Below, one piece after another: positions 1 to 18,110 of a stretch of DNA of 64,000 nt. Location: the IMG/VR virus record IMGVR_UViG_3300045921_000730, positions 62,001-126,000 of that record; one strand, written 5' to 3'. Numbering within the stretch: the stretch's first letter is position 1; each line of letters opens with the position of its first letter. The notes under the pieces were generated by a model. It saw nothing but the letters and a program-made list of their open reading frames with translations. It did not search any database and was not told the origin of the DNA. The translations under genes were made by a program, and so were the position numbers.

Positions 1-1
1 A

Positions 2-997
2 ACATCTTGGTTAAAAGAAATACCAGCACAATGTTTACAACAGAAGTGTCAAGATTTGTCACAAGCATTAAAACAGTCTTTTAAGACAAATAAAAGCAAA
101 AAGGGATTTCCAAAATTTAAGTCAAAAAAGACTGATGAATCTGGCATCAGATTCCCATCATTCAAATTTGAGGGTGACAGGATCAAGTTACCTAAAATGT
201 CACAAGGAATCAAAATTAAGTTACATCGTGATTTGCTTGGGAAGAAATCATCAGTTACTATATTTCGAGATAAAACCGGAGTCTTCTGGGCATCTATACT
301 TGTTTCTATTGATGATGTTGTCCCAACGAACACTATTTCTAATGTGGTAGGTATTGATGTCGGATTAAAAGAATTCGCGGTCACATCAGACGCTGAAATA
401 ATCAAAAACCCGAAATTTCTAAAAAGAACGGCAAAGAAACTAGCAAAAGCTCAAGCAAAACATAGTAGAAAAGAAAAAGGTTCGTCAAACAAAGAAAAAC
501 AAAGAATTAAAGTTGCAAAAATTTACAGAAAAATAAGCAATCAACGTAAAGATTTTATCAATCAAGTTGCTAGTTCGATAGGCAAGACAAACGACTTGAT
601 TGTAGTTGAAAATCTCAATGTAAAAGGTATGATGAAAAATCCTAACCTAGCTAAATCTATTTCAGATGTTAGTTGGGGAATGTTTTTATCCGCTTTAAAG
701 TGGCATTGTAAGAAACGGGGCAAACACTTCGTTGAGATTTCACAATGGTATCCTTCAAGCAAAATGTGTTCATGTTGTGGAAATAAAAAATCAGATTTGT
801 CCTTGAGCGACAGAACATACGAATGTAAAGAATGTGGTTTCACGATGGATAGAGATTTAAATGCTGCCATTAACATTCTGAAAGAAGGTATCAACCTTTT
901 CAATACCGTAGGAACTACGGAAATTAACGCCTGTGGAGATATGAGTTCTGAAGTAGGGAACTCAGCCCAGGAAGCTAGTTGTTCTTTAGACAACTAG
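2..997 (+). CDS. tnpB: TnpB RNA-guided endonuclease (IS200/IS605 superfamily, family 1), 5'-truncated by the window edge
   Basis: RuvC-I GIDVG, RuvC-II VVENL, Zn ribbon CSCC...CKEC, RuvC-III DRDLNAAINI; the frame stays open back to position 2. Confidence 0.95.
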   Translation, partial: TSWLKEIPAQCLQQKCQDLSQALKQSFKTNKSKKGFPKFKSKKTDESGIRFPSFKFEGDRIKLPKMSQGIKIKLHRDLLGKKSSVTIFRDKTGVFWASILVSIDDVVPTNTISNVVGIDVGLKEFAVTSDAEIIKNPKFLKRTAKKLAKAQAKHSRKEKGSSNKEKQRIKVAKIYRKISNQRKDFINQVASSIGKTNDLIVVENLNVKGMMKNPNLAKSISDVSWGMFLSALKWHCKKRGKHFVEISQWYPSSKMCSCCGNKKSDLSLSDRTYECKECGFTMDRDLNAAINILKEGINLFNTVGTTEINACGDMSSEVGNSAQEASCSLDN

Positions 998-1005
998 CAG
1001 TTCAC
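845..1005 (+). ncRNA. Putative omegaRNA scaffold and element right end overlapping the tnpB 3' end
   Basis: Ends with hairpin GAAGCTAGTTGTTCTTTAGACAACTAGCAGTTCAC; the same 161 bp recurs with 1 mismatch at 37597-37757. Confidence 0.75.
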
Positions 1006-1023
1006 AGATAAACTGTTAAAAAA

Positions 1024-1069
1024 ATGATCTGTCGCTTGTCTGAAAAACAAGTGGGATTCGGGTGCATCT
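1024..1069 (-). mobile_element. Remnant IS200/IS605-type right end on the minus strand
   Basis: Reverse complement GATGCACCCGAATCCCACTTGTTTTTCAGACAAG..GATCAT matches GATGCACCCGAATCCCGCTTGTTCTTTAGACAAG..GTTCAG ending at 35463. Confidence 0.6.
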
Positions 1070-1108
1070 TACTAAAGAAATAATCGACGCATTGGTGAGC
1101 AATAACGG

Positions 1109-1139
1109 TTGACTGAATACTTAAAATCGACTATAAATA
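1109..1139 (+). promoter_or_regulatory. Promoter for tmRNA: sigma70-like TTGACT-N17-TATAAA overlapping a T4-type late motif TATAAATA
   Basis: TTGACT at 1109-1114, TATAAATA at 1132-1139. Confidence 0.65.
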
Positions 1140-1144
1140 TATAT

Positions 1145-1412
1145 GTTAGTGAGTAATCACTGACAATGAGTGTATGAAGCAATCTGTAGACGGGCAAGAC
1201 ACGAGTTCGAATCTCGTCGCCTCCACAAATATTAACTCATGGGGGCGTTATGGAATCGATTGACGGGCGAAGGAAAGTGGACACTTCGAGAGACGACTGA
1301 CGTAATCAGCGTAAAACCTTAAATGCAAACGATGCATTTTATAATGAGGAATTCCGCCTAGCAGCGTAAACCTCAGGGGGAGCGTAGATTCCTTCTTACC
1401 CAACATCTACCG
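1145..1412 (+). ncRNA. ssrA: Circularly permuted (two-piece) tmRNA
   Basis: T-arm ACGAG-TTCGAAT-CTCGT (1201-1217) and acceptor 3' strand CGCCTCC-A (1218-1225) precede the 5' strand GGGGGCG (1241-1247), giving a G3:U70 pair; tag ORF 1325-1369 encodes ANDAFYNEEFRLAA*. Confidence 0.92.
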
Positions 1413-1446
1413 AAAGGACAGTCTTAAGACTGTCCTTTTTGTTTTT
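1413..1446 (+). terminator. Rho-independent terminator after tmRNA
   Basis: AAAGGACAGTC-TTAA-GACTGTCCTTT followed by a T-run. Confidence 0.85.
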
Positions 1447-1451
1447 ATCAT

Positions 1452-1654
1452 CTTCAGGGCTGAGAAAACCACGTGATCTTCAGTCGCGTGGATGAATCAG
1501 CCCATTGGTATCTAATTAATTTGTAGTCATAAATAGTAATGTCTGGTTGTGGGACGCAGTCGGACTCTAAACAAAAACCGAAGGAGGCGCCGGTGATGTT
1601 AGCTGGGTCGATGAGTTCGGAAACCGCGTTGTCTTTAGCTACGCGGTAGTTCAT
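1452..1654 (+). mobile_element. ORF-less IS200/IS605-type mini-element (left-end hairpin, omegaRNA-like segment, right end)
   Basis: Left end GGGCTGA-GAAAACC..GGATGAA-TCAGCCC; right end AAACCGCGTTGTCTTTAGCTACGCGGTAGTT(CAT), shared with the right end finishing at 11424; left boundary approximate. Confidence 0.7.
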
Positions 1655-1746
1655 TTTAAATTTTTCTCTCTTAATGAAACCCATTTCCGCATATTAAAAG
1701 CAGATATTATTTTCAGCTGTAAATACTCAAAAAAAGGAGTGTTAAA

Positions 1747-2457
1747 ATGAATAAAAATAATGTTTACGTTGAAAACGATGATGATGATGTAAAGAATCCT
1801 TTACCCTTAGTAGTAAAACAAAAATACGCTTACAAATCTTTTGAGCAAACGTTTACAGCACACCAAATTCATTTTTACATTACAGATGATATCGGTGAAC
1901 CGAGCGACTATGTTGAAATGATCCACCGCATTCTAACAGCGTCTCAAAACGATGTTATTTTTATTCATTTAAATACGGCTGGTGGAAGATTAGATACAGG
2001 AATTCAAATTATTAATGCAATGCAAAATTCACAAGCAAAAATTATTACTGTATTAGAATCAATGGCTCATTCTTTAGGAACTTTAATATTCTTGGCGGGA
2101 GATGAAATGGTTGTTCATGATCATTGCATGATGATGTTCCATAATTATCGTGGAGGAGTTATTGGTAAGGGTCATGAGCAAGCAGCAGAAATCAACGCTA
2201 CAACTAAATGGTATACTTCAATTGCAAAGAAAATTTATATACCTTTCATGACAGAAGAGGAAGTTGACAGAATTATGAAAGGCGAAGATATTTGGATGCA
2301 TTCACCCGAAATTCGTAGAAGACTTGACAAAATGATTAGGGATATGGAAACACCAAAGAGTGAAGGTATTGGTAAACAAACACCAACAAAAAAAGCAACT
2401 AGACGGCAAAAACAAAAACCAACAAAACAACCCGCAGTTGATAATTTGTCTGAATAA
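1747..2457 (+). CDS. clpP: ClpP-like serine protease
   Basis: HLNTAGG, AHSLG (catalytic Ser), MMMFH (catalytic His); basic/low-complexity C-tail; GGAG SD. Confidence 0.85.
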   Translation: MNKNNVYVENDDDDVKNPLPLVVKQKYAYKSFEQTFTAHQIHFYITDDIGEPSDYVEMIHRILTASQNDVIFIHLNTAGGRLDTGIQIINAMQNSQAKIITVLESMAHSLGTLIFLAGDEMVVHDHCMMMFHNYRGGVIGKGHEQAAEINATTKWYTSIAKKIYIPFMTEEEVDRIMKGEDIWMHSPEIRRRLDKMIRDMETPKSEGIGKQTPTKKATRRQKQKPTKQPAVDNLSE

Positions 2458-2467
2458 TAGTATATTA

Positions 2468-3824
2468 TTAGAAGCAAAACTGAAATTGTATATATAGATT
2501 ATAACCAATATAAAAATAATTTCTAAGAATGATCACCTACAAACTTCCAATTCAGCTAGCTGATGAAGAAAAGAAGATGATCCTTGAATTCCAAAGGATC
2601 CAATCTTCAATGATTCGCACTGCTTACAAACAAGCTGAATTTGGTTGTACCGAAATTTCTGTAAGACAGGAAATTCGAGATAGGTTCAAAAGTCAGCTTG
2701 ATTCCTGGTTCCAACAATCGGCGGTCAAATGTGGGATCGGAATGTTCAAGTCGGAACATGAAACAAATAAATCTGGTCGAATCTTTGGTGGCAAAGGCAA
2801 TCTGATTAGACGTGCAAAGGGACTTATTTCAAAAGAAGAATGGAAACAACGACGGCTTCTTCCGTTGTATCTAATTGGTGAAGCTCCTATCAAAGGCAAT
2901 CGCAAGTTCGAGTTCCACGAGGATCATGTCATTTTTAAGCCATTCAAAGGGACAAAGATCAAGATTGATCTTCCATCAATGAGGAAGAACTGGTCAAAGA
3001 TTTGGAAACAACTCTTGGTCATGGTTTCAGAAAAACAATTACCAATCACAGTCTCTCTAACTACTGATTCCATTTCCTTTTCTTTTGATGATGTTAAGGT
3101 AAAACAAGAGATCAGAAAGATTCCAAAGCCAATCAAGAATAGATATGCAGGCATTGATCTGAACCCAAATTATATTGGCATCTCGGTTTTTGATGGAACA
3201 AAGTTGATTGAAACCAAGATGTTCTCGTTGAAGTCATTGACTGGAAAACATGCCAGTTCATCAAAACTTGAACACGAAACAAGAGAAATCGGACATGCAA
3301 TAGGTAAGTGGCTTCAACATCTACGAGTTGATAAGCTATTTGTCGAAAAACTTGAATTCAAACAGGGTGACAAAGGTATTGGTAAAAACTTTAATCGCTT
3401 AACACAGAACCAATGGAAGAAAATAACTTTAAGGTCAATTCTAGCCAAATACTTCAAGTTATATGAAATCAATGCAGCATATTCCTCAACCATAGGAAAC
3501 ATTCTGCATCCCGAATTACCAGACCCGATAGCCGCAAGTACTGAGATTGCACAACGAGGCTACCGGCTTGTGATACTCAAGAACAAACAGTTCTATCCAA
3601 AACTACCAGCAATAAAGTATCTAGAGGACCTATGGAAGGAAACCAAGATACCTTTGGTCAATAACTGGAAAGAACTACATTCTTGGGTCAAAAACTCGAA
3701 ATTGAAATATCGAGTTCCGGTTCCAGACGAATCGGTTTTTAGAATTTTTCAGTCACCAGCTAGTTTGGTTGGTGTTCTATAGATTTGTATTGCTTATATG
3801 AATTTATAAGGAAAATTTATTTTA
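2468..3824 (+). mobile_element. TnpB-only element, family 2, copy 1
   Basis: Ends shared with 57797-59148 and 24880-25140: begins (TT)AGAAGCAAAACTGAA after ATATTA, ends GGAAAATTTATTTTA. Confidence 0.85.
2529..3782 (+). CDS. tnpB: TnpB-like nuclease lacking the Cys zinc ribbon (family 2)
   Basis: AGIDLNP (RuvC-I), FVEKL (RuvC-II), NAAYSSTIG...PDPIAASTEIAQRG (RuvC-III region). Confidence 0.8.
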   Translation: MITYKLPIQLADEEKKMILEFQRIQSSMIRTAYKQAEFGCTEISVRQEIRDRFKSQLDSWFQQSAVKCGIGMFKSEHETNKSGRIFGGKGNLIRRAKGLISKEEWKQRRLLPLYLIGEAPIKGNRKFEFHEDHVIFKPFKGTKIKIDLPSMRKNWSKIWKQLLVMVSEKQLPITVSLTTDSISFSFDDVKVKQEIRKIPKPIKNRYAGIDLNPNYIGISVFDGTKLIETKMFSLKSLTGKHASSSKLEHETREIGHAIGKWLQHLRVDKLFVEKLEFKQGDKGIGKNFNRLTQNQWKKITLRSILAKYFKLYEINAAYSSTIGNILHPELPDPIAASTEIAQRGYRLVILKNKQFYPKLPAIKYLEDLWKETKIPLVNNWKELHSWVKNSKLKYRVPVPDESVFRIFQSPASLVGVL

Positions 3825-3843
3825 CACAAACAATCAAATAGTT

Positions 3844-4848
3844 ATGGAATATACATCTCTCGAAAACATTATTAAGCAGCACGTTTACCTTCCTTCACAA
3901 AGAAAAAATGGGTGGCATCCCGTTCTTTGTAAGATATGCAACGACCATGGCAAAAAAGGTAAACGTGCTGCATTTAAATTTGAAAACAATACAATAGGTT
4001 ATAACTGTTTTAATTGCGGACACACTGCTTTATATGATCCTTCTGTTCATCAAATAATACCAAAAAACATGGTGCAAGTATTGACTGCTTTCGGTATAGA
4101 AGAACATGAATGGAAACAATGTTTGTTGGAAAACTTAAAAAAACATCCAGAGTTTTCTAAGCAAAAACAAAAAGAAATAGATTATAACCCAACAGAAATA
4201 CAACTACCAGAGTTCTTTGTAGAACTAAAAAACGATACAAATGAGTGGTCGCAATATGCAATTGAATATTTAAAAAATCAAAGAGGAATTAATTATAAAG
4301 ATTATCCTTTTTACATTTGCAATAACATAACGAATAACCCTTTATCGAAAAAATGGTACGGAAGATTAATTATTCCAATTTATAAAGATAATAAAATAAT
4401 TTTTTATCAGGGAAGAGATTTATCAAATAAGCGAAAAACAAAATATCTTTCACCAAATGTAGAACGAAGTAAAGTACTATATGGTTTTGACCATTTATTG
4501 ACAAATGAACATTTACCACTATATATTTGCGAAGGGTTCTTTGATGCATTCTTATTGAATGGCGTTGCTGTATTTGGTAGAAAAATTTCCAAAGAACAAA
4601 TTTTTTGGATTAATAAATCACCAAGAAAAAAAGTTGTCGTACCTGATCGTTTTGGTGATAATAGCGATCAATTTGCTGAACAAGCACTAAAACTTGGTTG
4701 GGGCGTAAGTACTCCTGATATTGGGGACGCAAAAGATGTAAGCGAAGCGTTTATGAAATATGGGAAAATATATACACTGCAATCAATAAAAGAAAACACA
4801 CACGAAGGTCTTTTAGCACAAATTAAAACAAAATTTTATTGTGAATAA
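3844..4848 (+). CDS. DNA primase (T4 gp61-like)
   Basis: N-terminal CKIC..CFNC Zn finger; YQGR; TOPRIM ICEGFFDA; PD and KDVSE motifs. Confidence 0.88.
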   Translation: MEYTSLENIIKQHVYLPSQRKNGWHPVLCKICNDHGKKGKRAAFKFENNTIGYNCFNCGHTALYDPSVHQIIPKNMVQVLTAFGIEEHEWKQCLLENLKKHPEFSKQKQKEIDYNPTEIQLPEFFVELKNDTNEWSQYAIEYLKNQRGINYKDYPFYICNNITNNPLSKKWYGRLIIPIYKDNKIIFYQGRDLSNKRKTKYLSPNVERSKVLYGFDHLLTNEHLPLYICEGFFDAFLLNGVAVFGRKISKEQIFWINKSPRKKVVVPDRFGDNSDQFAEQALKLGWGVSTPDIGDAKDVSEAFMKYGKIYTLQSIKENTHEGLLAQIKTKFYCE

Positions 4849-4856
4849 AAAATATA

Positions 4857-5069
4857 ATGACAGAAGAAAATGAACAAATTCGTGCCGATAAATGGTGCAA
4901 TATGTCTCTTAATGAGTTGAACAAACAACGCGATATTTTGCTTCAAAAGATATCGATGTTATCGACGCTTGGAATTAATTCTTCACCAACGATCAACGCT
5001 CTATATAAAGCGCACCAACAAGCATACGATCATTTAAACGAAATTATTGATAATCGATTCAAAACATGA
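4857..5069 (+). CDS. Hypothetical protein
   Basis: 70-aa ORF with an ATGA overlap to the next gene. Confidence 0.6.
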   Translation: MTEENEQIRADKWCNMSLNELNKQRDILLQKISMLSTLGINSSPTINALYKAHQQAYDHLNEIIDNRFKT

Positions 5070-6880
5070 AAAACAAATCTTATACCGGAAAAGATATTGT
5101 CGAACTTACGGACAGAGAGCACGTTCGTTTAAGAACACAAGTTTATCTTGGAAATATGCATCCAACTTTATTTAATATTCCAAAGTTGGATAGTGATAAA
5201 CTTGAAATAGAAAGTGTTGAATTTGTACCAGCCGTTTATAAAGCAGTTGGAGAAATTATTGATAATTCAATCGACGAATTTGCTCAAATAAAAAATTCTA
5301 CTAAAACATTAACAATTGATTGTGAACCAGAAAACGGGAAATATACGATCAATGATACTGGTCGCGGCATTCCAATTGACCGACGACCCGATGGAACATA
5401 CACGCCAGAAATTGCTTTAAGTCGGTTGCGTGCAGGAAGAAACTTTAAGAACGAAAAAGAAGTTGGTGTAATTGGTATGAATGGTGTTGGTGCTGCTTGC
5501 ACTAACTATTGTTCTACAAAGTTTAAGGTAATTGTAAAGAGAGATAATCAAACATATACACAAACGTTTGAGGATGGTGCTCTCAAAATTTCTGAGCCTT
5601 CTTTAAGACAAACAAAGTCTGATAAAACAGGGACAGAAATTAGTTTCGAACTTGACAAAAGAGTTTTTAAAGATGTTTATATACCTTTTTCGGTAATGAA
5701 AAACAGAGCAATTGAAATTGCTTTAACAAATCCGGACGTTTCTGTAATTTTTAATGGTGAAAAAATAAAATATAAAAACGGATTCAAAGAATATCTTGAT
5801 AAAATTGCACCAGAAAAATATTTTCCTTTTTCTATTAAAACAGAAAACGTGCAAGGAACATTTTATGTAATTACTGACTGCATTGAAAACATTGATGAAC
5901 AAATGTTTACGTGGGTGAATAGTTCTTATCTGTTTGATGGTGGCAAGTGTAACACTCAATTTGTAAACGCGTTCTTCGAAAAGACAATTTCACATCTACA
6001 AAACGCTGCAAAAAAGAACAAGAGTGATATTACAAGGAATGATGTAAGAGAAAATCTTGTTGTATTTGCTAACTTAAAAATTAAAAATCCCGAATATGAT
6101 TCACAATCCAAAACAAGGTTAACAGGACCTGATTTACGAAAAGAAATCAATGAAGCAATTGATTCTCAGTGGAAAAATTTTGTTCGTAAAAATAATCCTT
6201 GGCTTGATGTTGTGCTTGAGCGAGCAATTCAACGACATCACACACAAGCAAACAAAAAAGCAATTGAAGAACATCAAAAACAATTAAAAAAGCGTGTTCC
6301 TGGATTACTTGATGCAACAAGTCAAATTCGTTCCGAGTGCCAGTTGTTGATCACTGAAGGAATGTGCTTGGATGAACGCACACCCATTAAAATTCTTAGC
6401 TCAGAAGGATTGGTTGATATACCTTTAAAAAATGTAAATATTGGTGATACTGTTATAACACACAAAAACAACTTAAAACCAATAACTAATATAACAAGGA
6501 CTCTAAAACGAGGAACTCGTATTACTACATCTATTGGGCAGGTCGTGTGTAGTGATCAACATCGATGGTTAGTGTACGATACTATTACACATAAATTTGA
6601 TTGGGCGCCCACAAATGCATTAAATGCCAATGTACATAAATTAGTAAGAAGCCGGTTAGGTGATTGGGTATATTGTGCAGAATTTGTAATAGAAAATAAC
6701 AAGGACGCAGATAATATTGTATATCCACGTGTAATAATAACCGCTTTTGAAAAAATTAAAACATCATTGACCCATACGTTTATTGTGTTGGATACTGACA
6801 CATACGCAGTCGTGGAAATTCCATTCTCTGAATTGGATCCTTCACACCACCTAATGCTGTTGTTTAAATCAAAAAAATAA
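5066..6880 (+). CDS. Type II topoisomerase large subunit N-part (GyrB/gp39-like ATPase) fused to the N-half of a split intein
   Basis: EIIDNSIDE, DTGRGIP, GMNGVG; TOPRIM start LITEGM followed by intein block A CLDERT. Confidence 0.92.
   Translation: MKNKSYTGKDIVELTDREHVRLRTQVYLGNMHPTLFNIPKLDSDKLEIESVEFVPAVYKAVGEIIDNSIDEFAQIKNSTKTLTIDCEPENGKYTINDTGRGIPIDRRPDGTYTPEIALSRLRAGRNFKNEKEVGVIGMNGVGAACTNYCSTKFKVIVKRDNQTYTQTFEDGALKISEPSLRQTKSDKTGTEISFELDKRVFKDVYIPFSVMKNRAIEIALTNPDVSVIFNGEKIKYKNGFKEYLDKIAPEKYFPFSIKTENVQGTFYVITDCIENIDEQMFTWVNSSYLFDGGKCNTQFVNAFFEKTISHLQNAAKKNKSDITRNDVRENLVVFANLKIKNPEYDSQSKTRLTGPDLRKEINEAIDSQWKNFVRKNNPWLDVVLERAIQRHHTQANKKAIEEHQKQLKKRVPGLLDATSQIRSECQLLITEGMCLDERTPIKILSSEGLVDIPLKNVNIGDTVITHKNNLKPITNITRTLKRGTRITTSIGQVVCSDQHRWLVYDTITHKFDWAPTNALNANVHKLVRSRLGDWVYCAEFVIENNKDADNIVYPRVIITAFEKIKTSLTHTFIVLDTDTYAVVEIPFSELDPSHHLMLLFKSKK
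6365..6880 (+). other. Split intein N-fragment (IntN, 171 aa)
   Basis: Cys1 at residue 434 (CLDERTPI..IGDTVITH), block B CSDQHRW; ends in a stop with no C-terminal intein motifs. Confidence 0.85.
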
Positions 6881-6887
6881 CAATTTT

Positions 6888-6929
6888 TCTCCCTCTGTTA
6901 TAAATATGTTTCAAGATAATAGAGGGAGA
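6888..6929 (+). promoter_or_regulatory. RBS-sequestering hairpin containing a late promoter, upstream of the endonuclease gene
   Basis: TCTCCCTCTGTTAT pairs with ATAATAGAGGGAGA (covers the SD); TATAAATA at 6899-6906. Confidence 0.75.
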
Positions 6930-6933
6930 CGAA

Positions 6934-8160
6934 ATGAAATACATCTGTGCACATACAAATAAACTAATTTTTATATCAAACATTACCAGCGAGTTTAAAG
7001 TTCAGCGAGCACTTAGGTCACATCTTACCAGAAACGGTATAAACACCGATATGCTTCTAATGGAAATGAGGCATAAATTGAATAAATGCAATTTTTGTGG
7101 GTCGCCAGTACCATATAGACTTAAATATAAAATAACTGGAAATATTATTAGTGTTGATGGATTTATTCCTGGAAAAAATTGTAATATATTAGCTCCATAT
7201 TACTGCGGTGGTAAAGAATGTCCTGGAAAACGTCTCAATCGTAACAGCCTATCTTTCGTGCAATTAGCATATGGTGTTGATGGTGATACTGCTCTTAAAT
7301 TAATTCATAGTCGTAACTCAACACCATTTTATCCAGAAAATCATGAATCGCTTAGTGATTATAAAAATTATCAACGACATCAAAGTCAAAAACAAACAAA
7401 AGAATCTATAGCAATGGGTGCATATCATAGATCTCTTGAATATTTGTGCAAAGTTCTTGGAGAAGAACTTGGTACTTTAGCTTATAAAACAATAAATGAA
7501 CGTAAAAAACATACAAAAGCAACATACATAGAAAGATATGGACCAGTAAAAGGTAGCATGTTGTGGATTGCCCAGAAAAATTTAAGATCTGTTACAACTA
7601 TAACATGCTTTAAAGATCTATATACTATAACTTTAAATGCTTTGACATCAGTATCAACAGACGAACTCAGAACAACAAGACCCGATTTGTTGATCAAGAA
7701 AAAATATGGATATCCCATAGTTAAACGGTATATCGATTTTAATACAACATTAGATGAAGTGTTGCATGTGGTATTCACTGACCACCCACACCTTAACATA
7801 TTTGACAAAGATTCATATACTCGTACCGTGTTTGGCCATTGGTCATATACGCCCGCAGGTACATTACTACGTAGCAAAGCGGAACGAGCTGTATATAACC
7901 TGTTAGTGGAGAACGGTTTACAAGAAGGCGTTGATTTTTTAATAGATAAACCATATAGTAAACAATCTAAACATAGATATGATTTTTATTTGATTAAGAT
8001 TGATACTTATATAGAAGTAGCTGGAATAATGAGTAATCCTGTATATGTACAAAACTTAATAACCAAAACTATTAATTATCCTGTTGTTATTGTTACGCCA
8101 AATAATTACATTACCAAAATAAAGGAACTCATAAATGCAATTAAATCAACACCTGTTTGA
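6934..8160 (+). CDS. Free-standing putative homing endonuclease (C-terminal Vsr/PD-(D/E)xK-like domain)
   Basis: RSKAE..YDFYL..YIEVAG motif; N-terminal Cys clusters; lies between split-intein halves. Confidence 0.7.
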   Translation: MKYICAHTNKLIFISNITSEFKVQRALRSHLTRNGINTDMLLMEMRHKLNKCNFCGSPVPYRLKYKITGNIISVDGFIPGKNCNILAPYYCGGKECPGKRLNRNSLSFVQLAYGVDGDTALKLIHSRNSTPFYPENHESLSDYKNYQRHQSQKQTKESIAMGAYHRSLEYLCKVLGEELGTLAYKTINERKKHTKATYIERYGPVKGSMLWIAQKNLRSVTTITCFKDLYTITLNALTSVSTDELRTTRPDLLIKKKYGYPIVKRYIDFNTTLDEVLHVVFTDHPHLNIFDKDSYTRTVFGHWSYTPAGTLLRSKAERAVYNLLVENGLQEGVDFLIDKPYSKQSKHRYDFYLIKIDTYIEVAGIMSNPVYVQNLITKTINYPVVIVTPNNYITKIKELINAIKSTPV

Positions 8161-8863
8161 ACTTATAGATATCGTAGATATTTCGCCTGCTGGTTATTGC
8201 AATATGGTAGACATATCTGTAGCCGATGATGAAAGTTTCATTCTTGCTAATGGTATAGTATCTCACAATTCAGCAAAAAGTCAAATTTGTGAGGCAAGAA
8301 ATCCACAAACAACAGCAGCATTTGCGTTACGCGGTAAAGTAAACAACGTGTATGGTATGACTCCAGCACAATTATTGAAAATGGAAAAATTAACAGATTT
8401 ACTTGCAGCAATTGGTTTAACACCAGGCAAAAAAGTTGCACGAAGCATGCTCCGTTATGGAAAAATTGTAATTGCAACAGATGCCGATTATGATGGGAGT
8501 GATATTTTTACACTTTTAATTAATGTATTTTATCAATATTGGCCTGAGTTGTTTGATAAAAACTATGATCCAATCATTTATCGACTAATAGCACCGAATG
8601 TAGTTGCATCCAAAAACGGAAAACGAGTACATTTTACAACAAGACAACAATATGAACTTGTAAAAGAAAAGTACAAAGGTTGGACAATTGAATACATGAA
8701 AGGTCTTGGTAGTATGCATAAAACAGATTGGGAAATGATCTTAAATGGTGAAACCGATACTCAAATCCCAATTATAGATGATGGAAAAATGAAAGACACA
8801 CTAACGCTGTTGTTTAGCGAAAATGCTGATAAACGAAAAGAATGGCTACAAAGTGACGAATAA
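8135..8863 (+). CDS. Split intein C-fragment (45 aa) fused to the topoisomerase II TOPRIM C-part
   Basis: MVDISVADDESFILANGIVSHN|SAKS, then LRGKVNN, ATDADYDG, YMKGLGS. Confidence 0.92.
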   Translation: MQLNQHLFELIDIVDISPAGYCNMVDISVADDESFILANGIVSHNSAKSQICEARNPQTTAAFALRGKVNNVYGMTPAQLLKMEKLTDLLAAIGLTPGKKVARSMLRYGKIVIATDADYDGSDIFTLLINVFYQYWPELFDKNYDPIIYRLIAPNVVASKNGKRVHFTTRQQYELVKEKYKGWTIEYMKGLGSMHKTDWEMILNGETDTQIPIIDDGKMKDTLTLLFSENADKRKEWLQSDE

Positions 8864-8904
8864 ACAACAACTAATTAAACAATAGAATTTAAAGAAATTA
8901 AACA

Positions 8905-10251
8905 ATGAAACCGCAATCATCAAAATACGTTGAAAACGAAAGAAGAGAGTATTCTCTCTACGTAATGACTAATAGAGCAATTCCGTCAATCACTGATGGA
9001 TTAAAAGCAGCTGGCAGAAGAGTACTTTGGACAGCAAAAGATGGAAAAAAATACAAGTCAGCAACGCTTGCTGGTGCTACAATGCCAATTCATCCGCACA
9101 GCAGTCCAGAAGGCGCTATTGATACGCTAGCAGCACCATATGGAAATAATATACCCTTATTCAAAGGTGATGGTGCATTTGGAACATTACTTAATCCAAC
9201 GTCATATGGTGCTAGTCGTTATACATCTGTTTCTGTTTCTGAATTTACAAAAGATGTAATGTTTAGAGATATAGAAATTGTTCCAATGATGGAAAACTAT
9301 GACGGAACACTAATGGAACCCGTACATTTTCTTCCATTGGTTCCTGTTGTTTTATTAAATCCATCGGAAGGTATTGCTGTTGGTTTTGCAACAAATATTC
9401 TTCCTCGTTCACTGGAAGATATTATTGTTGCTCAATTAACCTTCCTTAAAAAGGGCAAAAAATATATCTCAACGCCTGTCCCCACGTTTACACCAACTGA
9501 TGCTAGAGCTGTTTTATATGAAGAAACAGAAAAAGGAACAGCATATTACTTTCACGGAAAGTACGATCAATTAGATGCAACAACAATCAAAATTACACAA
9601 CTTCCATATGGTCAATCACACGAAAAAGTAATTGATAAAATTGAAGAATTGAAAGAAAAAGATATTGTTGTTGACTACGAAGATAATTCTAAAGATACAA
9701 TTTCCATCACAATTAAATTCAAGAAGGGTGTTCTTCGTGATATGACCGAAGAAGATGTTTTAAAATCGCTCGGTTTAATTTCAAAACAATTCGAAAACTT
9801 AAATGTTCTTGATTTCAGCCATAAGCGAATCGTAAATCTTACAGCATCAGATCTGATCGCAAACTTTACGGAATGGCGTTTAACGTGGTATCATAATAGA
9901 TATCAAAGACTAAAAGATTTACTGCAAGAAGAACTCCAAAAATATTTAGATATTAGAACAGCAATTAAACACCAAGTAAACAATATAGCAAGAAAAACTC
10001 AATCAAGAGCAGAGCTCAAAGATTTCTTAAAAGAAATTAAAATAATTAATATTGATTATATTGCTGACTTACCAATTTATCGTTTCACTGAAGAAGAAAG
10101 AATTAAAAATGAACAAAGAATTAAAGAAGCAACTGAAAAAATGGAATATTATGACATGCTATTATCAAACGAAGAAGAAAGAAAAAAAATCTATATTCTA
10201 GAGCTTGAAGAAGTGTTGAAAAAATATACAAAGGGAAATTATAATACTTAA
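8905..10251 (+). CDS. Type II topoisomerase cleavage subunit (GyrA/gp52-like)
   Basis: RAIPSITDGLK, HPH, GASRYT active-site Tyr, GIAVGFATNI. Confidence 0.92.
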   Translation: MKPQSSKYVENERREYSLYVMTNRAIPSITDGLKAAGRRVLWTAKDGKKYKSATLAGATMPIHPHSSPEGAIDTLAAPYGNNIPLFKGDGAFGTLLNPTSYGASRYTSVSVSEFTKDVMFRDIEIVPMMENYDGTLMEPVHFLPLVPVVLLNPSEGIAVGFATNILPRSLEDIIVAQLTFLKKGKKYISTPVPTFTPTDARAVLYEETEKGTAYYFHGKYDQLDATTIKITQLPYGQSHEKVIDKIEELKEKDIVVDYEDNSKDTISITIKFKKGVLRDMTEEDVLKSLGLISKQFENLNVLDFSHKRIVNLTASDLIANFTEWRLTWYHNRYQRLKDLLQEELQKYLDIRTAIKHQVNNIARKTQSRAELKDFLKEIKIINIDYIADLPIYRFTEEERIKNEQRIKEATEKMEYYDMLLSNEEERKKIYILELEEVLKKYTKGNYNT

Positions 10252-10342
10252 TACACACAATACAGGCCTTATTGTGGTGATGCGATTCAATCGGCAACCA
10301 CTAAATGTTTAAAGAACAACAAGTTCCCTTGAGAGAAATTAT

Positions 10343-10648
10343 ATGAATCAAAAGTTAATTTTTTCAAACAAAACATTCAGAGACATATCGACAAGAGCAT
10401 TTCAACTTTCTTTAAAAGATGGTAGAGATATTCGTTCTCGATACATAAAAGCAAAACATGTTAGTTTTTACAAAGCAGAGAAGTTATCAAAAAATGATAT
10501 GATAGAAATTATTTTACAAACCGAATTTGCGCCAGAACTTGTCGATGAATATTTAGAAAACGTCAAAGTTTGGCGTAAATACGAGCAACAAGCCATTGAA
10601 GACTGGCTACAAAATATAATGGAGGAAAAGGAAACAACACATGAATAA
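10343..10648 (+). CDS. Hypothetical protein
   Basis: 101-aa ORF in the operon direction. Confidence 0.6.
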   Translation: MNQKLIFSNKTFRDISTRAFQLSLKDGRDIRSRYIKAKHVSFYKAEKLSKNDMIEIILQTEFAPELVDEYLENVKVWRKYEQQAIEDWLQNIMEEKETTHE

Positions 10649-10889
10649 GCACTTTGCTTCAACAAAATCAAAAGTTTTGAATGATATTATTCGTATGAAT
10701 AAAGATCAATTAATCGATCTGTATGGGATTTCGTTTGAAGACGACGGGACTGTTTACGATTCAACAGAAATGAAAACGTTCTCCAGTTTAAGAGAATGGG
10801 CAAATTATATTGCTGAGCTTGAAGAAGAAGACAATTACGGTTCTTTTCAAAAGCGTCAGAGCAAATATACTTTTGACGATGAATACTAA
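10641..10889 (+). CDS. Hypothetical protein
   Basis: 82-aa ORF with SD, overlapping the previous stop. Confidence 0.65.
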   Translation: MNKHFASTKSKVLNDIIRMNKDQLIDLYGISFEDDGTVYDSTEMKTFSSLREWANYIAELEEEDNYGSFQKRQSKYTFDDEY

Positions 10890-11296
10890 TTGAAAAATTG
10901 TATTGTCGAAACAAATGAATAATGCTTAGTTGTTGGAAGTATTATATAATTATGTTGTGACAACATGGCATTACTTTCCATTGGTTTTTTGCCTGGAGAC
11001 AAAGACCATGTAATATGGTAAATCTTACCATCTTTTCTAATTGTTGTGCCCTCAACTTCAACAACCAATGCTTCAACACCATTAATGTCTTGATATCCAA
11101 CAACTACAATTGTTGGAGACCACAAGTGTTGAGGTACCTGATTGATAGCACTAGAGGGAACATCAAACTCATATGTGACGTGATGAGCAACAACACGATC
11201 ATATTTTGGCGGAAACAAATCTAACAGCTCGCTTCTGACATTGTTGGGAAGAGGATATGCAAGATATCCTTGTTTTTTAAGGTGTTGTAATTTCAT
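10886..11296 (-). CDS. 2H phosphoesterase-like protein
   Basis: Two HxT motifs (HHVTY, YHITWS). Confidence 0.65.
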   Translation of the reverse strand: MKLQHLKKQGYLAYPLPNNVRSELLDLFPPKYDRVVAHHVTYEFDVPSSAINQVPQHLWSPTIVVVGYQDINGVEALVVEVEGTTIRKDGKIYHITWSLSPGKKPMESNAMLSQHNYIILPTTKHYSFVSTIQFFN

Positions 11297-11424
11297 ATTA
11301 ATTCCCGCAAGGAAACCTGATGTTCTTTAGACGTCAGGATGAATTGCGGACCTTTCATTAGTTAAATTGAAAAATTCTAACGGAGCAGGAAAACCGCGTT
11401 GTCTTTAGCTACGCGGTAGTTTAT
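11297..11424 (+). mobile_element. ORF-less IS200/IS605-type mini-element inserted in an ATGA stop/start overlap
   Basis: Left-end hairpin GGAAACCTGATGTTCTTTAGACGTCAGGATGAA, right-end hairpin ..GCGGTAGTTTAT; removing it gives minus-strand GGA-CTA-TGA overlapping ATG-AAA. Confidence 0.8.
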
Positions 11425-11939
11425 AGTCCGAGTTTCCTTAGTTTTTTAATCGTATCTGCGGCGCTTGTGTGTAAAATACCAATACCCCCTGCTGCAACCC
11501 AAGGAACAATTGATTTGTTTCTATCATCAATTAATATGCTGGTTGGTGTAGCAAACCGTGCCTTGTCTTTACTATTACGAACGAGATGAACTTTTGTTTG
11601 ATCAGTAATATGCAAGTGTTTTGCAACCCATGCACGCTTTTCGGGAATAGCAGCTTTAATGTGGCCTGTTGCCGAAAGAATTTCGGGGTTATATTTTTTT
11701 ACATAGTTCCATAGCTCCATGGCATCAGGTAACGGTGGCATTCTACCCCAAATTTCATTACCTTTCATTGCTTCTTGCTCAAGACTTTGCCAAAATTTAC
11801 GTTTATTTTCTTTTGCGTTCCATTCATTAGGTTTCATTCCAGTAATTTCTTCAGCGACACGATCAAAATCTACTAAAACGCCATCTAAATCAACATATAT
11901 TTTATATATTTTTTCTTCAAAAATCTGTTGTAATTTCAT
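11421..11939 (-). CDS. HAD-family 5'(3')-deoxyribonucleotidase-like protein
   Basis: DLDGVLVDF, ILSAT, K, ILIDD motifs; start placed at ATG 11939. Confidence 0.8.
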   Translation of the reverse strand: MKLQQIFEEKIYKIYVDLDGVLVDFDRVAEEITGMKPNEWNAKENKRKFWQSLEQEAMKGNEIWGRMPPLPDAMELWNYVKKYNPEILSATGHIKAAIPEKRAWVAKHLHITDQTKVHLVRNSKDKARFATPTSILIDDRNKSIVPWVAAGGIGILHTSAADTIKKLRKLGL

Positions 11940-11952
11940 TTCTTCGGCCCTC

Positions 11953-11989
11953 AAAAAGCAAGTGGAGAACCTTAACTCCACTTGCTTTT
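11953..11989 (-). terminator. Hairpin terminator downstream of nrdJ (possibly bidirectional)
   Basis: AAAAAGCAAGTGGAG...CTCCACTTGCTTTT inverted repeat. Confidence 0.7.
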
Positions 11990-12008
11990 ATTTAGCAATA
12001 GTTAATTT

Positions 12009-15000
12009 TTAACCACATTTACTGGAACCACAATCTGCACACTTTTCGCATCCTTCCTGATAAATGATGTTATGAGATCCACAGTTTTGGCAGACTTTAC
12101 CTTCAATCTTCTCACCGTCCTTAATAAAGGATGATAGGTATTTCTTGATTGAAAACAAGAACGAACCTGCATACGCGTCTTCAACTTTATCAAGAGTTGT
12201 TACGATATTACGAATTAACACACCATGACGAAGATTGAGTGAAATCATACGAGCGACCTTTGTAACATTATTATCACCTGCAATCTTTTCGAGAACTTTG
12301 TTGATGTGCTTTTCAGGAATATTCTTCGTACGTGCAAGATCTGTTAACAACTCAACGGCATTGTTGGTTAATGTGTTCTTTTCGTGACTGTTTGTATGAA
12401 CAAAGAAACCAAACGGGCGTGTTTTGTTATCATCCCACCACAAAACCGTAAGATACCATTTTTTACCTTCTGCCTTAAGTGTTTTCACAGTTGCTGGTGC
12501 ACTGTCAGGAAGTTGTACATCTTCAAGAACGATTTCTTCATCGATGTCACTAATATTTTTTTCGTCTTTAGCAGCAAGAACTGTTGTCATTGTTCCTGTA
12601 CGATATGTAGTAACACCTTTAACATAACCTGAAATATATGCATCAAGGTAAATGTTTTTGAAATCTTCAAAGCTATAATCGTTTGGAACATTAACGGTCT
12701 TACTCATAGCACTATCGACCCAACGAGCAAATCCCTTCAAATCATTTACATGATCTTGAACGCTCATACCAAGAGCGGTTGCAGCCCAGTCTGCTGTCGG
12801 ATCCCATTCGCCGATCTTTTTCATAAAACGAACACCATAATCTTCACATAACACTTCCTTTGTAAGACCACGATTCTTGTCAATTTTATAGACTGTACCA
12901 TCGGGTGCGACGCCACGAAGAATTTCTTCGTCACCCTCTTTAGTAAATTTAAACATTTCTGTCTCATGCCATGCACCCTCATACCACTTTGGACACACAT
13001 CAGCAATTTCTTCCGGCATTGTGTTTACGATTACTGTACGAATGTATTCATGTAAAAACACTGGTTCAAGACCACCGGAAACCACATTTGCTAAAATAGA
13101 AGTGTTTCCCGTAGGTTGAATTGAAAGAAGTGAACTATTACGAATACCTGTTGTGCGAAGTTTTTCCATATATTCGTCCGAAAGATTAAGCAACTTTATA
13201 AAAGGACCTTCCGCATGCTTCACAGGATCACAATAAGAAAACTTACCTTTCTCGACAGCCAAATCAATTGAAGCTTCATAAGCTGTTCTGGCAATTGTAC
13301 TCATTACTTGTTCACGAAGTTGATTAGCGCGATCTGATGCAAAGCGAGCTTTCAACATATAAAGCGCTGACCCCCAGCCTAAAATACCAACGCCAATACG
13401 ACGCTTGTTTTTAATTGAATGTGCATATTCGGGAAGTGGTGCATTTGTCAAATCGTTAATATTATCAAGAAAACGAACAAGATATTTTGTATACTTCTTG
13501 ATTAATTCTAGATCAAACCCTGAACGATCCGAATTAACGAATTGTGTTAAATTCAAAGAACCAAGATTACATACACCAGAAGGTGCTAATGTCTGTTCGC
13601 CGCAATTTCCTGTATAACACCACTCAGTAGGAAATACATGTTCATTATGCATGACACTAATATCCCACACATCTGCAGATTCAACAGGCTTAACAGAAAC
13701 TACTTCAACAAAGTCTAAATTGTGGTGGGTTCTTTTATCAGACACTTGACTAATAATATTTTTAAGTTTTTGTTGTTTAACTGGATGAGAAATATCAAAA
13801 ACGTTAATAAATTTTAAAACTGCCTGTCCACCAACAGCAACATCCCAGCGATCATATGATTTATTATATTCTTCACCATTTGGAAACGATACATTTTTTG
13901 TCGTTGTATTCCATATCATTGCTGGAACCCCTGCAAAACTAATTAGTTTTGCAAATTCTTGTGCTAAATCTTTTCGCGAAGTTGTTAATGTAATTTTCAA
14001 ATTGTTTGGATCATCGCTAACACATCCGTCCGCGCTCAATAAACCATCAACGAATCCTTTGATATATTGATCGTTGCTTTCCCAAACACTTTGTGGAATT
14101 TTTTTATTACCAGGAGTTAATTTGTACTTGTTTAATAATATATCCACTAACTCCTCGTCGCTAAATTGAAAATACAATTCACTAGCGCCATAATTTTGTC
14201 GTTGAATTAATGTTGATGGTAATTTTTTCATTCTGTTTACTATAGATAGTACTCGTTCTGCCATTGAACGTTCTTGCATACTAAATGCAATACCACAATT
14301 GTAGCGACCATCAGACAATTCACTGATCCAACCATCTCCAAAGAAATATCCAACAAAGAATCCTTCATCATATGTTAGGGTAAGATCACCATAGATACCA
14401 ATATCTTCATTTCTATTCAATGGAATAAGATCTCCAATTTTAAGATCTTTGGTATCTACCTTATAGATGCGTTTCATCTTTGAATCATACACAGGCCAGC
14501 GATGTTCTCTAGTTGCTCGAATCATTTTATTTGCCCCAAAAGAAATTTCTAACAATTCTTGATTCTTTCCAGATAAACGACACGAAGCTAGAGCCCATGT
14601 ACCATCCAAAGATTTCACCTCAAATTGTTTTCCTTCTAGTGTTTCAATAGGAAAAATTCCTTGTTTTGTATGAACAAGAGTACCAGCTGGCATTGATGGA
14701 TTTGTTGCAAATACTGTTTCTGCATAATTTAATGGTAAGAAATAATTAGCACGATCAAGAAACAATACGCCTGGCTCAGCACGATTGTAAGTGCTTTCCA
14801 TAATCAAATTCCATAACCATGAAACAGAAATTGTGTTGTATACTTTTACAGGATATCCCTTTGATTTCCACAACTTAATATTTCCATCCCAATCAGTTTT
14901 GTATTGAGGATGTGTGGTGTCGGGAAAAATTAAATTCCACTTATCCAATTCCATGCGCTCTTGTTGTAAAACAGTATTGTTTGTATCGTCTGTGTTTTTT

Positions 15001-17294: not shown

Positions 17295-17295
17295 T

Positions 17296-17715
17296 TTAAT
17301 TTTCTCCTATTTCTATTTTTTTATTTGGTATATTACATTTTTGTAAAAATTCTATTCCTTTTGTGTTTCGATAATCAATTGAATAAAAAACTTCTTTTAC
17401 GCCTATGGATGCAAGCTGTTTAGCACACTCAATACACGGTGCATGTGTTATAAATACAGAGGCATTTTTTCCGTCGCCTTGGCCTTTAGCTAATTTGGCA
17501 ATTGCGTTTGCTTCAGCATGAAGCACTTCTGGTTTTGTAATTCCTTGATCATCTTCACAACAATTATCCCAACCCGGAGGTGTACCGTTATAACCTATTG
17601 ATATTACACTATCATTTTTTACAATGATACAACCAACTTTTAATCTATTACATGTAGATAATTTAGCATATTCAAAAGCTACTTTCATGTGAGCAATAAT
17701 CATTTTTTCCTTCAT
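17296..17715 (-). CDS. dCMP deaminase
   Basis: HAEANA and PCIEC Zn motifs, GYNG. Confidence 0.93.
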   Translation of the reverse strand: MKEKMIIAHMKVAFEYAKLSTCNRLKVGCIIVKNDSVISIGYNGTPPGWDNCCEDDQGITKPEVLHAEANAIAKLAKGQGDGKNASVFITHAPCIECAKQLASIGVKEVFYSIDYRNTKGIEFLQKCNIPNKKIEIGEN

Positions 17716-17887
17716 AAGGGTCCTTATTTACAAATTGATTTTTTAAACCGAAAAAAATAATAATAAATCAATATATTATTCTCGTACTTTTTTAATGTTT
17801 TTTCAACTAGTTGTTTTTTTCTTAAAAAACAATTTAAAAAACCTAATGTTCTTGGACAACTAATATGTAGGAGCAATAAATTCTCTG

Positions 17888-18085: not shown

Positions 18086-18110
18086 TGTTATTAACCTTAA
18101 GCAAAGAGGG

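What the first reader, a model, noticed from the sequence alone, without database searches (positions are those of the whole stretch)
1145..1446. Phage-encoded circularly permuted tmRNA
Seen: the acceptor 3' half (T-arm, CGCCTCCA) comes before a short spacer and the GGGGGCG 5' half, with G3:U70 alanine identity. The tag is ANDAFYNEEFRLAA*, and the gene has its own promoter and terminator. CCA is not encoded (ACAA). Established: two-piece tmRNAs occur in alphaproteobacteria, some betaproteobacteria and some cyanobacteria. Inference: a permuted copy in a jumbo phage is unusual and hints at host range or an independent permutation.
Basis: partly seen in the sequence, partly recalled or inferred. 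Interest (0 to 1): 0.78.

Follow-up and report, generated by a model that had tools for sequence, protein, structure and literature searches.

The report
Jumbo-phage two-piece (permuted) tmRNA gene
A giant uncultured phage carries an intact, circularly permuted ribosome-rescue RNA (tmRNA), but similar genes are already recorded in its cultured relative XacN1 and other phages, so this is a new member of a known kind.

Summary
Window 1145-1446 (+) is a complete, circularly permuted tmRNA gene. It scores 121 bits on Rfam tmRNA_permuted and 108 bits on beta_tmRNA. It has a 7-bp acceptor stem with G3:U70, the tag ANDAFYNEEFRLAA, no encoded CCA, a promoter-like site and a terminator. The window comes from a 244-288 kb myovirus contig whose nearest isolates are Xanthomonas phage XacN1, Xoo-sp13 and Stenotrophomonas phages CM1 and RAS14.

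The gene is not a one-off. About 20 related genes turned up in viral and metagenome contigs. Six phage lineages keep the order tmRNA, ClpP-like protease, primase, topoisomerase II. Across 16 sequences, 27 of 34 predicted pairs show compensatory changes and G3:U70 never varies.

The claim of unusualness is overstated. XacN1 and Stenotrophomonas phages DLP_6, Marzo and QDWS359 and Xanthomonas phage Rb1 carry the same type. A 2022 survey already listed 53 permuted phage tmRNAs, XacN1 among them. An independent permutation is unlikely, and the permuted form is a poor guide to the host.

Modest additions: default ARAGORN misses this gene, and it is linked to a ClpP-like gene. Most likely it works as a phage-supplied trans-translation RNA that depends on host SmpB, AlaRS, RNase P and CCA-adding enzyme.

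The parts
1109..1139 (+). Sigma-70-like promoter: -35 TTGACT (1109-1114), 17-nt spacer, -10 TATAAA (1132-1137, extended TATAAATA to 1139). The inferred transcription start is about 1144-1146.
   Evidence: Sequence. The pattern is unique in the window, 1 match against 0.07 expected. It is conserved as TTGAC[TC]-N17-TATAAATAC upstream of the tmRNA in L092, L096 and L103. The consensus scanner does not list it because the last -10 base is A.
1145..1225 (+). Acceptor piece (3' half of the tRNA-like domain). It holds a 5' leader; the P2 strands 1168-1173, 1179-1180 and 1191-1197; the T-arm 1201-1217 (stem 1201-1205/1213-1217); the acceptor 3' strand 1218-1224; and the discriminator A1225. The next bases are CAA, so CCA must be added after transcription.
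   Evidence: Rfam alignment; RNAalifold pairs mapped to window coordinates; ARAGORN -ps places the 3' tRNA domain at 1055-1092 of the region that starts at 1001.
1226..1240 (+). Intervening sequence (15 nt), removed when the precursor is cut into two pieces. RNase P is expected to cut 5' of G1241.
   Evidence: IVS length in the family ranges from 8 to 117 nt, and the window is among the shortest.
1241..1324 (+). Start of the coding piece: acceptor 5' strand 1241-1247 (G1243 is G3); D-loop analogue 1248-1259; P2 strands 1260-1266, 1277-1278 and 1281-1286; PK1 region 1287-1312 (hairpin 1293-1300/1306-1312; possible short second stem 1287-1288 with 1301-1302).
   Evidence: The P2 helices and the hairpin show compensatory changes. 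The 1287:1302 pair is C:G in 13 sequences and G:C in 3.
1325..1369 (+). Tag reading frame: resume codon GCA at 1325, 14 codons, stop TAA at 1367-1369. The tag is ANDAFYNEEFRLAA. With the charged alanine it begins AANDxxY and ends LAA.
   Evidence: Family tags all begin AN[DE] (ANA in XacN1), and nearly all end in AA.
1384..1410 (+). Post-tag hairpin (stem 1384-1389/1405-1410) with loop UCCUUCUUACCCAAC, which matches the loop consensus of the beta-type model.
   Evidence: Rfam beta_tmRNA alignment with high posterior probability. The same hairpin and loop motif appear in relatives.
1412..1446 (+). Intrinsic terminator: a 12-bp hairpin at 1412-1439 followed by a T run.
1747..2457 (+). ClpP-like serine protease gene (236 aa), the conserved downstream neighbour of the tmRNA in this phage clade.
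   Evidence: Pfam CLP_protease 1.7e-13 and PHROG 1827 7.7e-57. The catalytic Ser and His align with solved ClpP structures. Synteny is shown.
1..1008 (+). Upstream neighbour, not part of the tmRNA: a TnpB gene of the IS200/IS605 type (396 aa; it starts 193 nt before the window and stops at 997). The right-end/omega-RNA-like segment is 845 to about 1008.
   Evidence: The element boundary is defined by two further copies of 845-1005 elsewhere in the window. It is absent from the related loci.

Best explanation
This is a functional two-piece tmRNA (SsrA) gene of a jumbo myovirus. It is transcribed from its own sigma-70-like promoter as a precursor of about 300 nt that ends at an intrinsic terminator. 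The precursor is cut into an acceptor piece (about 1145-1225) and a coding piece (1241 to about 1441). RNase P is expected to cut 5' of G1241. The 15-nt spacer is trimmed back to A1225 and a CCA-adding enzyme supplies CCA. The two pieces stay together through the 7-bp acceptor stem and the P2 helices. AlaRS charges the RNA through G3:U70. With host SmpB and EF-Tu it enters stalled ribosomes, and translation resumes at GCA 1325, adding AANDAFYNEEFRLAA. This releases the ribosome and marks the truncated protein for ClpXP/ClpAP-type degradation. For the phage the likely benefit is keeping ribosomes free when mRNAs are being cut, whether by host shut-off, RNase-type defence or heavy late translation. 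What is shown: the anatomy, the covariation and the conservation in a phage clade. What is inferred: processing, charging, SmpB dependence, tagging and the physiological benefit.
For: The covariance-model scores are far above threshold. ARAGORN -ps independently calls a permuted tmRNA with the same tag. Related genes lie in the same genomic position in six phage lineages that share 61-64% ClpP-like and 48-52% primase identity. In 16 family members, 27 of 34 predicted pairs keep pairing through changes on both sides. G1:C72, G2:C71 and G3:U70 are invariant in 16/16, while acceptor positions 4-7 vary with compensation. The tags keep the AN[DE]...aromatic...AA pattern. The promoter motif is conserved. 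The gene is 100% identical in two strain variants that differ by nearby indels. Two-piece tmRNA is known to work in Caulobacter (Keiler et al. 2000, as cited in PMC9004378 and PMC11915505).
Against: There are no expression, processing or tagging data. CCA is not encoded, so function depends on a CCA-adding enzyme that I did not find in the window; a search with the XacN1 enzyme as query found nothing. No SmpB gene is in the window. One P2 position is a G-G mismatch in this copy (1192:1265). Default ARAGORN rejects the gene. The PK1 pseudoknot is only partly supported.
Confidence: 0.85

Rival explanations
1. The RNA works mainly as a competitor or re-programmer of host trans-translation. It would displace host tmRNA on SmpB and ribosomes so that rescued proteins receive the phage's own tag. 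That tag might feed the neighbouring phage ClpP-like protease, or change how fast tagged proteins are degraded.
For: The tmRNA is tightly linked, on the same strand, to a ClpP-like gene in six lineages. The ClpP-like protein keeps the catalytic Ser and His. The phage tags are longer and more varied than a typical 10-residue tag. A tRNA-like-domain-only phage molecule is reported to inhibit host tmRNA (PMC4131195).
Against: XacN1, Xoo-sp13 and RAS14 keep the ClpP-like gene without an adjacent tmRNA. XacN1, DLP_6, Marzo, QDWS359 and Rb1 keep the tmRNA in or beside tRNA genes instead. A strong terminator separates the two genes. No phage ClpX-like unfoldase was seen in the window. The linkage may simply be inherited synteny.
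Confidence: 0.1
2. It is a decaying relic: a captured tmRNA gene that is no longer functional in this phage.
For: CCA is missing (ACAA), one P2 pair is mismatched, and default ARAGORN does not report the gene.
Against: The acceptor stem, T-arm, tag frame, promoter and terminator are all intact. Its model score (121 bits) equals that of XacN1 (123 bits) and other family members. L093, L094 and L018 also lack an encoded CCA. The sequence is identical across strain variants.
Confidence: 0.05
3. It is host DNA: either a fragment of a bacterial ssrA gene carried as an attachment site by a temperate phage, or bacterial sequence mis-binned into a viral contig.
For: tmRNA genes are common integration sites, and phages often carry their 3' ends (PMC9004378, PMC11915505).
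Against: Both halves and the tag are present. Phage replication and baseplate genes flank it on a 244-288 kb contig. No integrase was found in the window. The same gene sits at the same place in related phages. No bacterial species representative matched its resume region.
Confidence: 0.01

Closest known systems
Permuted tmRNA of Xanthomonas jumbo phage XacN1 (AP018399.1 37177-37596; listed as 'Permuted' in Table S1 of Buchholz et al. 2022)
   Same: Same phage group: the baseplate wedge protein is about 50% identical. Same beta-type model, with almost the same score (107.8 against 107.7 bits). Same permuted order and G3:U70, and a tag ending LAA.
   Different: In XacN1 the gene lies in the tRNA cluster of the terminal repeat, next to a GOLLD RNA, and not beside the ClpP-like gene. 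Its CCA is encoded, its spacer is 117 nt against 15 nt here, and its tag is ANANTFDYALAA. It is not annotated in the GenBank record.
Permuted tmRNAs of Stenotrophomonas phages DLP_6, Marzo/Mendera/Moby and QDWS359, and of Xanthomonas phage Rb1
   Same: They score as beta-type or tmRNA_permuted, have G3:U70 and carry AND... tags. They share the same covarying helices.
   Different: These are smaller phages (62-168 kb) of other groups. Their genes sit next to tRNA genes, encode CCA and have longer spacers.
Two-piece tmRNA of Betaproteobacteria (Rfam RF01850; Sharkady and Williams 2004, as cited in PMC9004378)
   Same: The gene aligns to the model over its full length, above the gathering score. 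The match includes the post-tag hairpin loop motif CCUU..UUACC..AA.
   Different: It scores 108 bits. Two near-consensus genes in IMG/VR that I take to be bacterial-type score 299 and 182 bits. It is carried by a phage. Clade members L096 and L100 score better on the alpha model and L094 falls below the beta threshold, so the subtype label is not stable.
Two-piece tmRNA of marine myophages (Methylophilales phage Melnitz, pelagimyophages, cyanophages; PMC9004378)
   Same: A phage-borne permuted tmRNA with its own promoter in a large T4-like or jumbo myovirus.
   Different: Those genes are reported as the alphaproteobacterial or cyanobacterial type, and some are preceded by a glutamine riboswitch. 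No riboswitch is found here.
Caulobacter crescentus two-piece tmRNA (Keiler, Shapiro and Williams 2000)
   Same: Same architecture and expected maturation. It is the experimental proof that a permuted gene gives a working two-piece tmRNA.
   Different: It is a cellular gene of the alpha type. According to the Rfam consensus, CCA is encoded in typical permuted genes.
One-piece tmRNAs of mycobacteriophages (Bxz1 group) and Bacillus phage G; the tRNA-like-domain-only molecule of phage DS6A (PMC4131195)
   Same: They are phage-encoded tmRNA-related genes.
   Different: They are not permuted. DS6A lacks a tag frame, whereas the tag is conserved here.

Membership tests
tmRNA (SsrA), permuted / two-piece form | Score at or above the curated threshold of the family covariance model (RF04321) | tested here: met
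   121.3 bits against a gathering score of 47, covering model positions 1-213 of 213.
tmRNA (SsrA), permuted / two-piece form | tRNA-like domain: 7-bp acceptor stem with G3:U70, a discriminator A and a T-arm | tested here: met
   1241-1247 pairs with 1218-1224; G1243:U1222; A1225; T-arm 1201-1217. G3:U70 is present in 16/16 relatives, and the neighbouring pairs change with compensation.
tmRNA (SsrA), permuted / two-piece form | Gene order: the 3' half of the tRNA-like domain lies upstream of the 5' half, separated by an intervening sequence | tested here: met
   The 3' half ends at 1225, the spacer is 1226-1240 and the 5' half starts at 1241.
tmRNA (SsrA), permuted / two-piece form | Tag reading frame with an alanine resume codon and a hydrophobic C-terminus, followed by a stop | tested here: met
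   GCA at 1325, ending ...LAA, TAA at 1367-1369. The frame is conserved in the family.
tmRNA (SsrA), permuted / two-piece form | Pseudoknot PK1 upstream of the resume codon | tested here: inconclusive
   The hairpin 1293-1300/1306-1312 is supported by covariation. The second stem is only 2 bp (1287-1288 with 1301-1302), with one covarying pair.
tmRNA (SsrA), permuted / two-piece form | Processing into two RNAs, alanylation, SmpB binding and tagging activity | not testable with these tools
   This needs RNA and protein experiments.
Beta-type two-piece tmRNA (RF01850) | Score at or above the gathering score, over the full model including the lineage-specific 3' domain | tested here: met
   107.7 bits against 84, covering positions 1-331 of 331. 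The post-tag hairpin loop matches the consensus.
Beta-type two-piece tmRNA (RF01850) | A stable subtype across close relatives, and descent from the betaproteobacterial gene | tested here: inconclusive
   L094 scores 79.1, below 84. L096 and L100 score best on the alpha model. The tree resolves only the shallow clade window + L103 + L092 + L096 (+ L100), and the deep branches are open. No bacterial match was found.
Phage attP fragment of a host ssrA gene | Only the 3' part of the gene is present, next to an integrase | tested here: not met
   The gene is complete, with its own promoter and terminator. No integrase was found among the window ORFs that were searched.
tRNA-like-domain-only tmRNA mimic (phage DS6A type) | No tag reading frame | tested here: not met
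   A 14-codon tag frame is present and is conserved in relatives.

The most novel reading that the evidence does not exclude
Phages may carry their own lineage of beta-type permuted tmRNA, which moves among phages whatever form of tmRNA the host has. In this jumbo-phage clade it could work together with the adjacent ClpP-like protease as a phage-encoded tag-and-degrade module. A further possibility is that the betaproteobacterial two-piece gene and the phage genes share a phage-mediated origin.
Probability: 0.1. Interest if true: 0.7.

Novelty: new member of a known kind. Interest (0 to 1): 0.35.

Why it matters
Why phages encode tmRNA has hardly been tested experimentally; my literature searches found only surveys and speculation. 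This locus extends the record in four ways.

- It defines a conserved family of permuted tmRNAs in uncultured jumbo phages related to XacN1.
- It shows strong structural covariation, which argues for function.
- The same RNA type occurs in phages whose hosts are expected to have ordinary one-piece tmRNA, so the gene form should not be used for host prediction.
- Default ARAGORN misses 4 of 16 family members, including this one, so surveys based on ARAGORN undercount such genes.

The cultured carriers (XacN1, DLP_6, Marzo, QDWS359, Rb1) make the function directly testable.

Tried and rejected
1. Nucleotide searches of the window tmRNA and of window 1-20000 against 50,697 phage records found no match. 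Relatives only appeared when I used a protein neighbour, DNA patterns or other family members as queries.
2. The single genome-contig scan, with a resume-region pattern, gave 37 hits. None has tRNA-like halves nearby, so all are chance matches. No bacterial donor or host could be named.
3. The tree of 23 tmRNA cores supports only the shallow clade that holds the window. Alpha-type and beta-type sequences are not separated, so it says nothing about origin.
4. The TATAAATA motif (T4 late-promoter-like) is not enriched in the window, 7 found against 7.8 expected, so I make no late-promoter claim.
5. The minimum-energy co-fold of the two pieces reproduces the acceptor stem and T-arm but not the covariation-supported P2 helices. 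I rely on the comparative structure instead.
6. A search for a phage CCA-adding enzyme, using XacN1 ORF446 as query, found nothing in viral contigs. That tool only reaches close relatives, so this is not evidence of absence.
7. Rfam at a permissive threshold over 1-1800 shows no riboswitch or other known RNA next to the gene.
8. The Sharkady and Williams 2004 paper could not be read, and the supplement of the 2025 tmRNA database paper held no phage list.

Full report
**What is in the sequence.** A T-arm (1201-1217) runs into the acceptor 3' strand CGCCTCC (1218-1224) and the discriminator A1225. The next bases are CAA, so CCA is not encoded. After a 15-nt spacer (1226-1240) comes GGGGGCG (1241-1247). 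It pairs with the 3' strand over seven positions, and the third pair is G1243:U1222, the alanine identity pair. The reading frame from GCA 1325 to TAA 1367-1369 gives ANDAFYNEEFRLAA.

**Detector results.** Rfam calls tmRNA_permuted at 1168-1369 (121.3 bits, threshold 47) and beta_tmRNA at 1118-1441 (107.7 bits, threshold 84), both over the full model length. ARAGORN finds nothing at default settings. With its lowered threshold it reports a 'Permuted' tmRNA at 1135-1460 with the same domains and tag.

**Promoter and terminator.** The terminator hairpin 1412-1439 plus a T run is picked up by the scan tool. The promoter TTGACT-17-TATAAA (1109-1137) is not, because the scan demands T as the last -10 base. 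The pattern is nevertheless unique in the window, 1 match against 0.07 expected. The same TTGAC[TC]-N17-TATAAATAC lies upstream of the gene in L092, L096 and L103.

**What genome this is.** The window is positions 62001-126000 of IMG/VR contig UViG_3300045921_000730 (244,293 bp). An identical stretch lies on a 288,343-bp JGI contig. The window encodes:
- a primase, T4-type topoisomerase II and a DnaB-like helicase;
- a DNA polymerase interrupted by a group I intron;
- a ribonucleotide reductase with inteins;
- baseplate wedge and hub proteins, and a 4134-residue ORF.

The baseplate wedge protein is about 50% identical to those of Xanthomonas phages XacN1 and Xoo-sp13 and Stenotrophomonas phages CM1 and RAS14. 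It is 41% identical to that of Ralstonia phage RsoM2USA. So this is an uncultured jumbo myovirus of the XacN1-like group, with 34% G+C.

**The gene is conserved in related phages.**
- Searching viral contigs with the downstream ClpP-like protein found three relatives (61-63% identity). All three carry a permuted tmRNA upstream on the same strand.
- A DNA pattern taken from the region just before the resume codon brought in 10 viral and 17 metagenome loci, about 19 distinct genes.
- Six lineages share the order tmRNA, ClpP-like protease, primase, topoisomerase II: the window, L092/L099, L093/L095/L107, L094, L096/L101/L113 and L103/L115/L120. Where the flank is long enough, a DNA ligase lies further upstream.
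- In a tree of the tmRNA cores the window groups with L103, L092 and L096 (support 96/85), then L100 (99/98). Its closest relative is L103, at 77% identity. Deeper branches are unresolved.
- Two strain variants have a 100% identical tmRNA. They lack a 201-bp segment just downstream (window 1449-1649, most of a 76-residue minus-strand ORF) and the 417-residue gene at 2529-3782.

**Evidence for a constrained structure.** On an alignment of 16 family members, RNAalifold predicts 34 pairs: the acceptor stem, the T-stem, three P2 helices and a hairpin before the tag. Of these, 27 keep pairing through changes on both sides.
- G1:C72, G2:C71 and G3:U70 are invariant in all 16.
- Acceptor positions 4-7 vary with compensation, for example GGGGGCG/CGCCTCC, GGGGATG/CATCTCC, GGGCTTG/CAGGTCC and GGGGTAT/ATACTCC.
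- A short second stem that would turn the pre-tag hairpin into pseudoknot PK1 has one covarying pair, C:G in 13 and G:C in 3. I count PK1 as only partly supported.
- Tags keep AN[DE], an aromatic residue near position 7 (counting the charged alanine as 1), and a C-terminal AA. By established knowledge of the E. coli tag, these are the positions read by SspB (AANDxxY) and ClpX (LAA). This points to a proteobacterial host, no more precisely than that.
- CCA is encoded in 12 of the 16. The window, L094, L093 and L018 lack it.

**Comparison with what is known.** Phage-borne permuted tmRNAs are on record.
- Buchholz et al. 2022 found tmRNA genes in 402 of 18,146 phage genomes, giving 133 unique forms. 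ARAGORN called 53 of these two-piece, mostly in marine or aquatic phages.
- Their Table S1 lists XacN1, Mendera and Moby as 'Permuted'.
- The 2025 tmRNA database holds 79 phage sequences and is the source of the RF04321 model.

I confirmed the cultured cases directly:
- XacN1 has a beta-type permuted gene at 37177-37596 (107.8 bits). It is not annotated in the record. It lies in the tRNA cluster of the terminal repeat, beside a GOLLD RNA, and its tag is ANANTFDYALAA.
- DLP_6, Marzo, QDWS359 and Rb1 have permuted genes next to tRNA genes.

In XacN1, Xoo-sp13 and RAS14 the ligase gene runs straight into the ClpP-like gene, with no room for a tmRNA. The position beside ClpP is therefore specific to the uncultured clade.

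**Subtype and origin.** The window fits the beta model over its whole length, and the post-tag hairpin loop (UCCUUCUUACCCAAC) matches that model's loop consensus. This argues against a separate permutation event.

The label is still soft. Two near-consensus genes in IMG/VR that I take to be bacterial-type score 299 and 182 bits, while the phage genes score 79-135. L094 falls below threshold, and L096 and L100 score better on the alpha model.

Permuted genes are reported from three bacterial clades: Alphaproteobacteria, a group of Betaproteobacteria, and Cyanobacteria. Xanthomonas and Stenotrophomonas are outside them, so the gene form does not predict the host. That their own tmRNA is one-piece is my inference from that statement and from memory. 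I could not check it.

**How it most likely works.** The precursor is transcribed from its own promoter and ends at the terminator. RNase P cuts 5' of G1241. The spacer is trimmed to A1225 and CCA is added, as is known for T4 tRNAs that lack an encoded CCA. The two pieces are held together by the acceptor stem and by P2 (1168-1173/1281-1286, 1179-1180/1277-1278, 1191-1197/1260-1266). AlaRS charges the RNA. With host SmpB it rescues stalled ribosomes and adds the tag.

No SmpB or CCA-adding enzyme is encoded in the window. XacN1 does encode a CCA-adding enzyme, but my search for a homologue found nothing. All steps after transcription are inferred.

**The ClpP-like neighbour.** The ClpP-like protein keeps the catalytic Ser and His. 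This makes a functional link with the tag an attractive idea, but the evidence does not go beyond conserved synteny.

**Verdict.** The gene is a new member of a known kind rather than something unusual. The useful additions are the conserved uncultured jumbo-phage family, the ClpP linkage, the missing CCA, and the fact that default ARAGORN overlooks this gene and three other family members.

Noticed in passing
window 1-997 (the gene starts 193 nt before the window; L091 2061-3251): A full-length TnpB gene (396 aa; OrfB_IS605 plus Cas12f-like TNB domains) with no TnpA sits about 110 nt upstream of the tmRNA promoter. It is absent from the related phage loci.
   Followed up: partly
window 845-1005, 37597-37757 and 17917-18051: The last 160 nt of the tnpB region (the presumed omega-RNA scaffold and right end) recur as two ORF-less copies, at 99.4% and 75.6% identity. 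Each is followed by different sequence. The divergent copy keeps its hairpins through compensatory changes, so these may be stand-alone omega-RNA units.
   Followed up: partly
L091 1040-1567 (about 700 nt upstream of the window start): A 175-aa ORF with two H-x-T/S motifs is recorded as Pfam Acb1, an anti-CBASS 2H phosphodiesterase.
   Followed up: no
window 5066-8863: The topoisomerase II large-subunit gene is split. Residues 1-432 of ORF 5066-6880 and ORF 8135-8863 match the contiguous gene of relatives. Between them lie an unrelated tail and a 408-aa ORF (6934-8160) with no family match, which may be a mobile insertion.
   Followed up: no
window 12009-17294 (-): The ribonucleotide reductase large subunit is 1761 aa and has intein splicing, Hint and LAGLIDADG/homing-endonuclease domains at more than one site, so it carries at least two inteins.
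   Followed up: no
window 27698-32485: The DNA polymerase is in two parts (27698-29374 and 31403-32485), separated by about 2 kb. That stretch holds a minus-strand HNH homing-endonuclease ORF (29408-31024) and a group I intron core (31189-31410, 85.8 bits).
   Followed up: no
window 40849-53253 (-): A 4134-residue ORF lies next to the baseplate wedge gene (53320-56826). I did not analyse it.
   Followed up: no
window 1449-1649 and 2469-3817: Two segments are absent from otherwise near-identical strain variants (L128, L129). One holds most of a 76-aa minus-strand ORF (1454-1684) that converges on the tmRNA terminator. The other holds the whole 417-aa gene 2529-3782, which has no family match.
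   Followed up: partly
L126 38570-38983 (XacN1, AP018399.1): A GOLLD RNA (227 bits) lies 1 kb downstream of the unannotated XacN1 tmRNA. Both fall in a 2.5-kb stretch that has no annotation in the record.
   Followed up: no
L106 and L118 (both on Ga0302309_10000037, 177 kb, about 59% G+C): One metagenome contig holds two copies of the same family member (tag ANDSIYDQRIAA). This may reflect a terminal repeat or a concatemer.
   Followed up: no
L098 22-66 and L111 1052-1096: COG2908 RNA motifs (about 70 bits) lie about 2-3 kb upstream of the permuted tmRNA in two related contigs.
   Followed up: no
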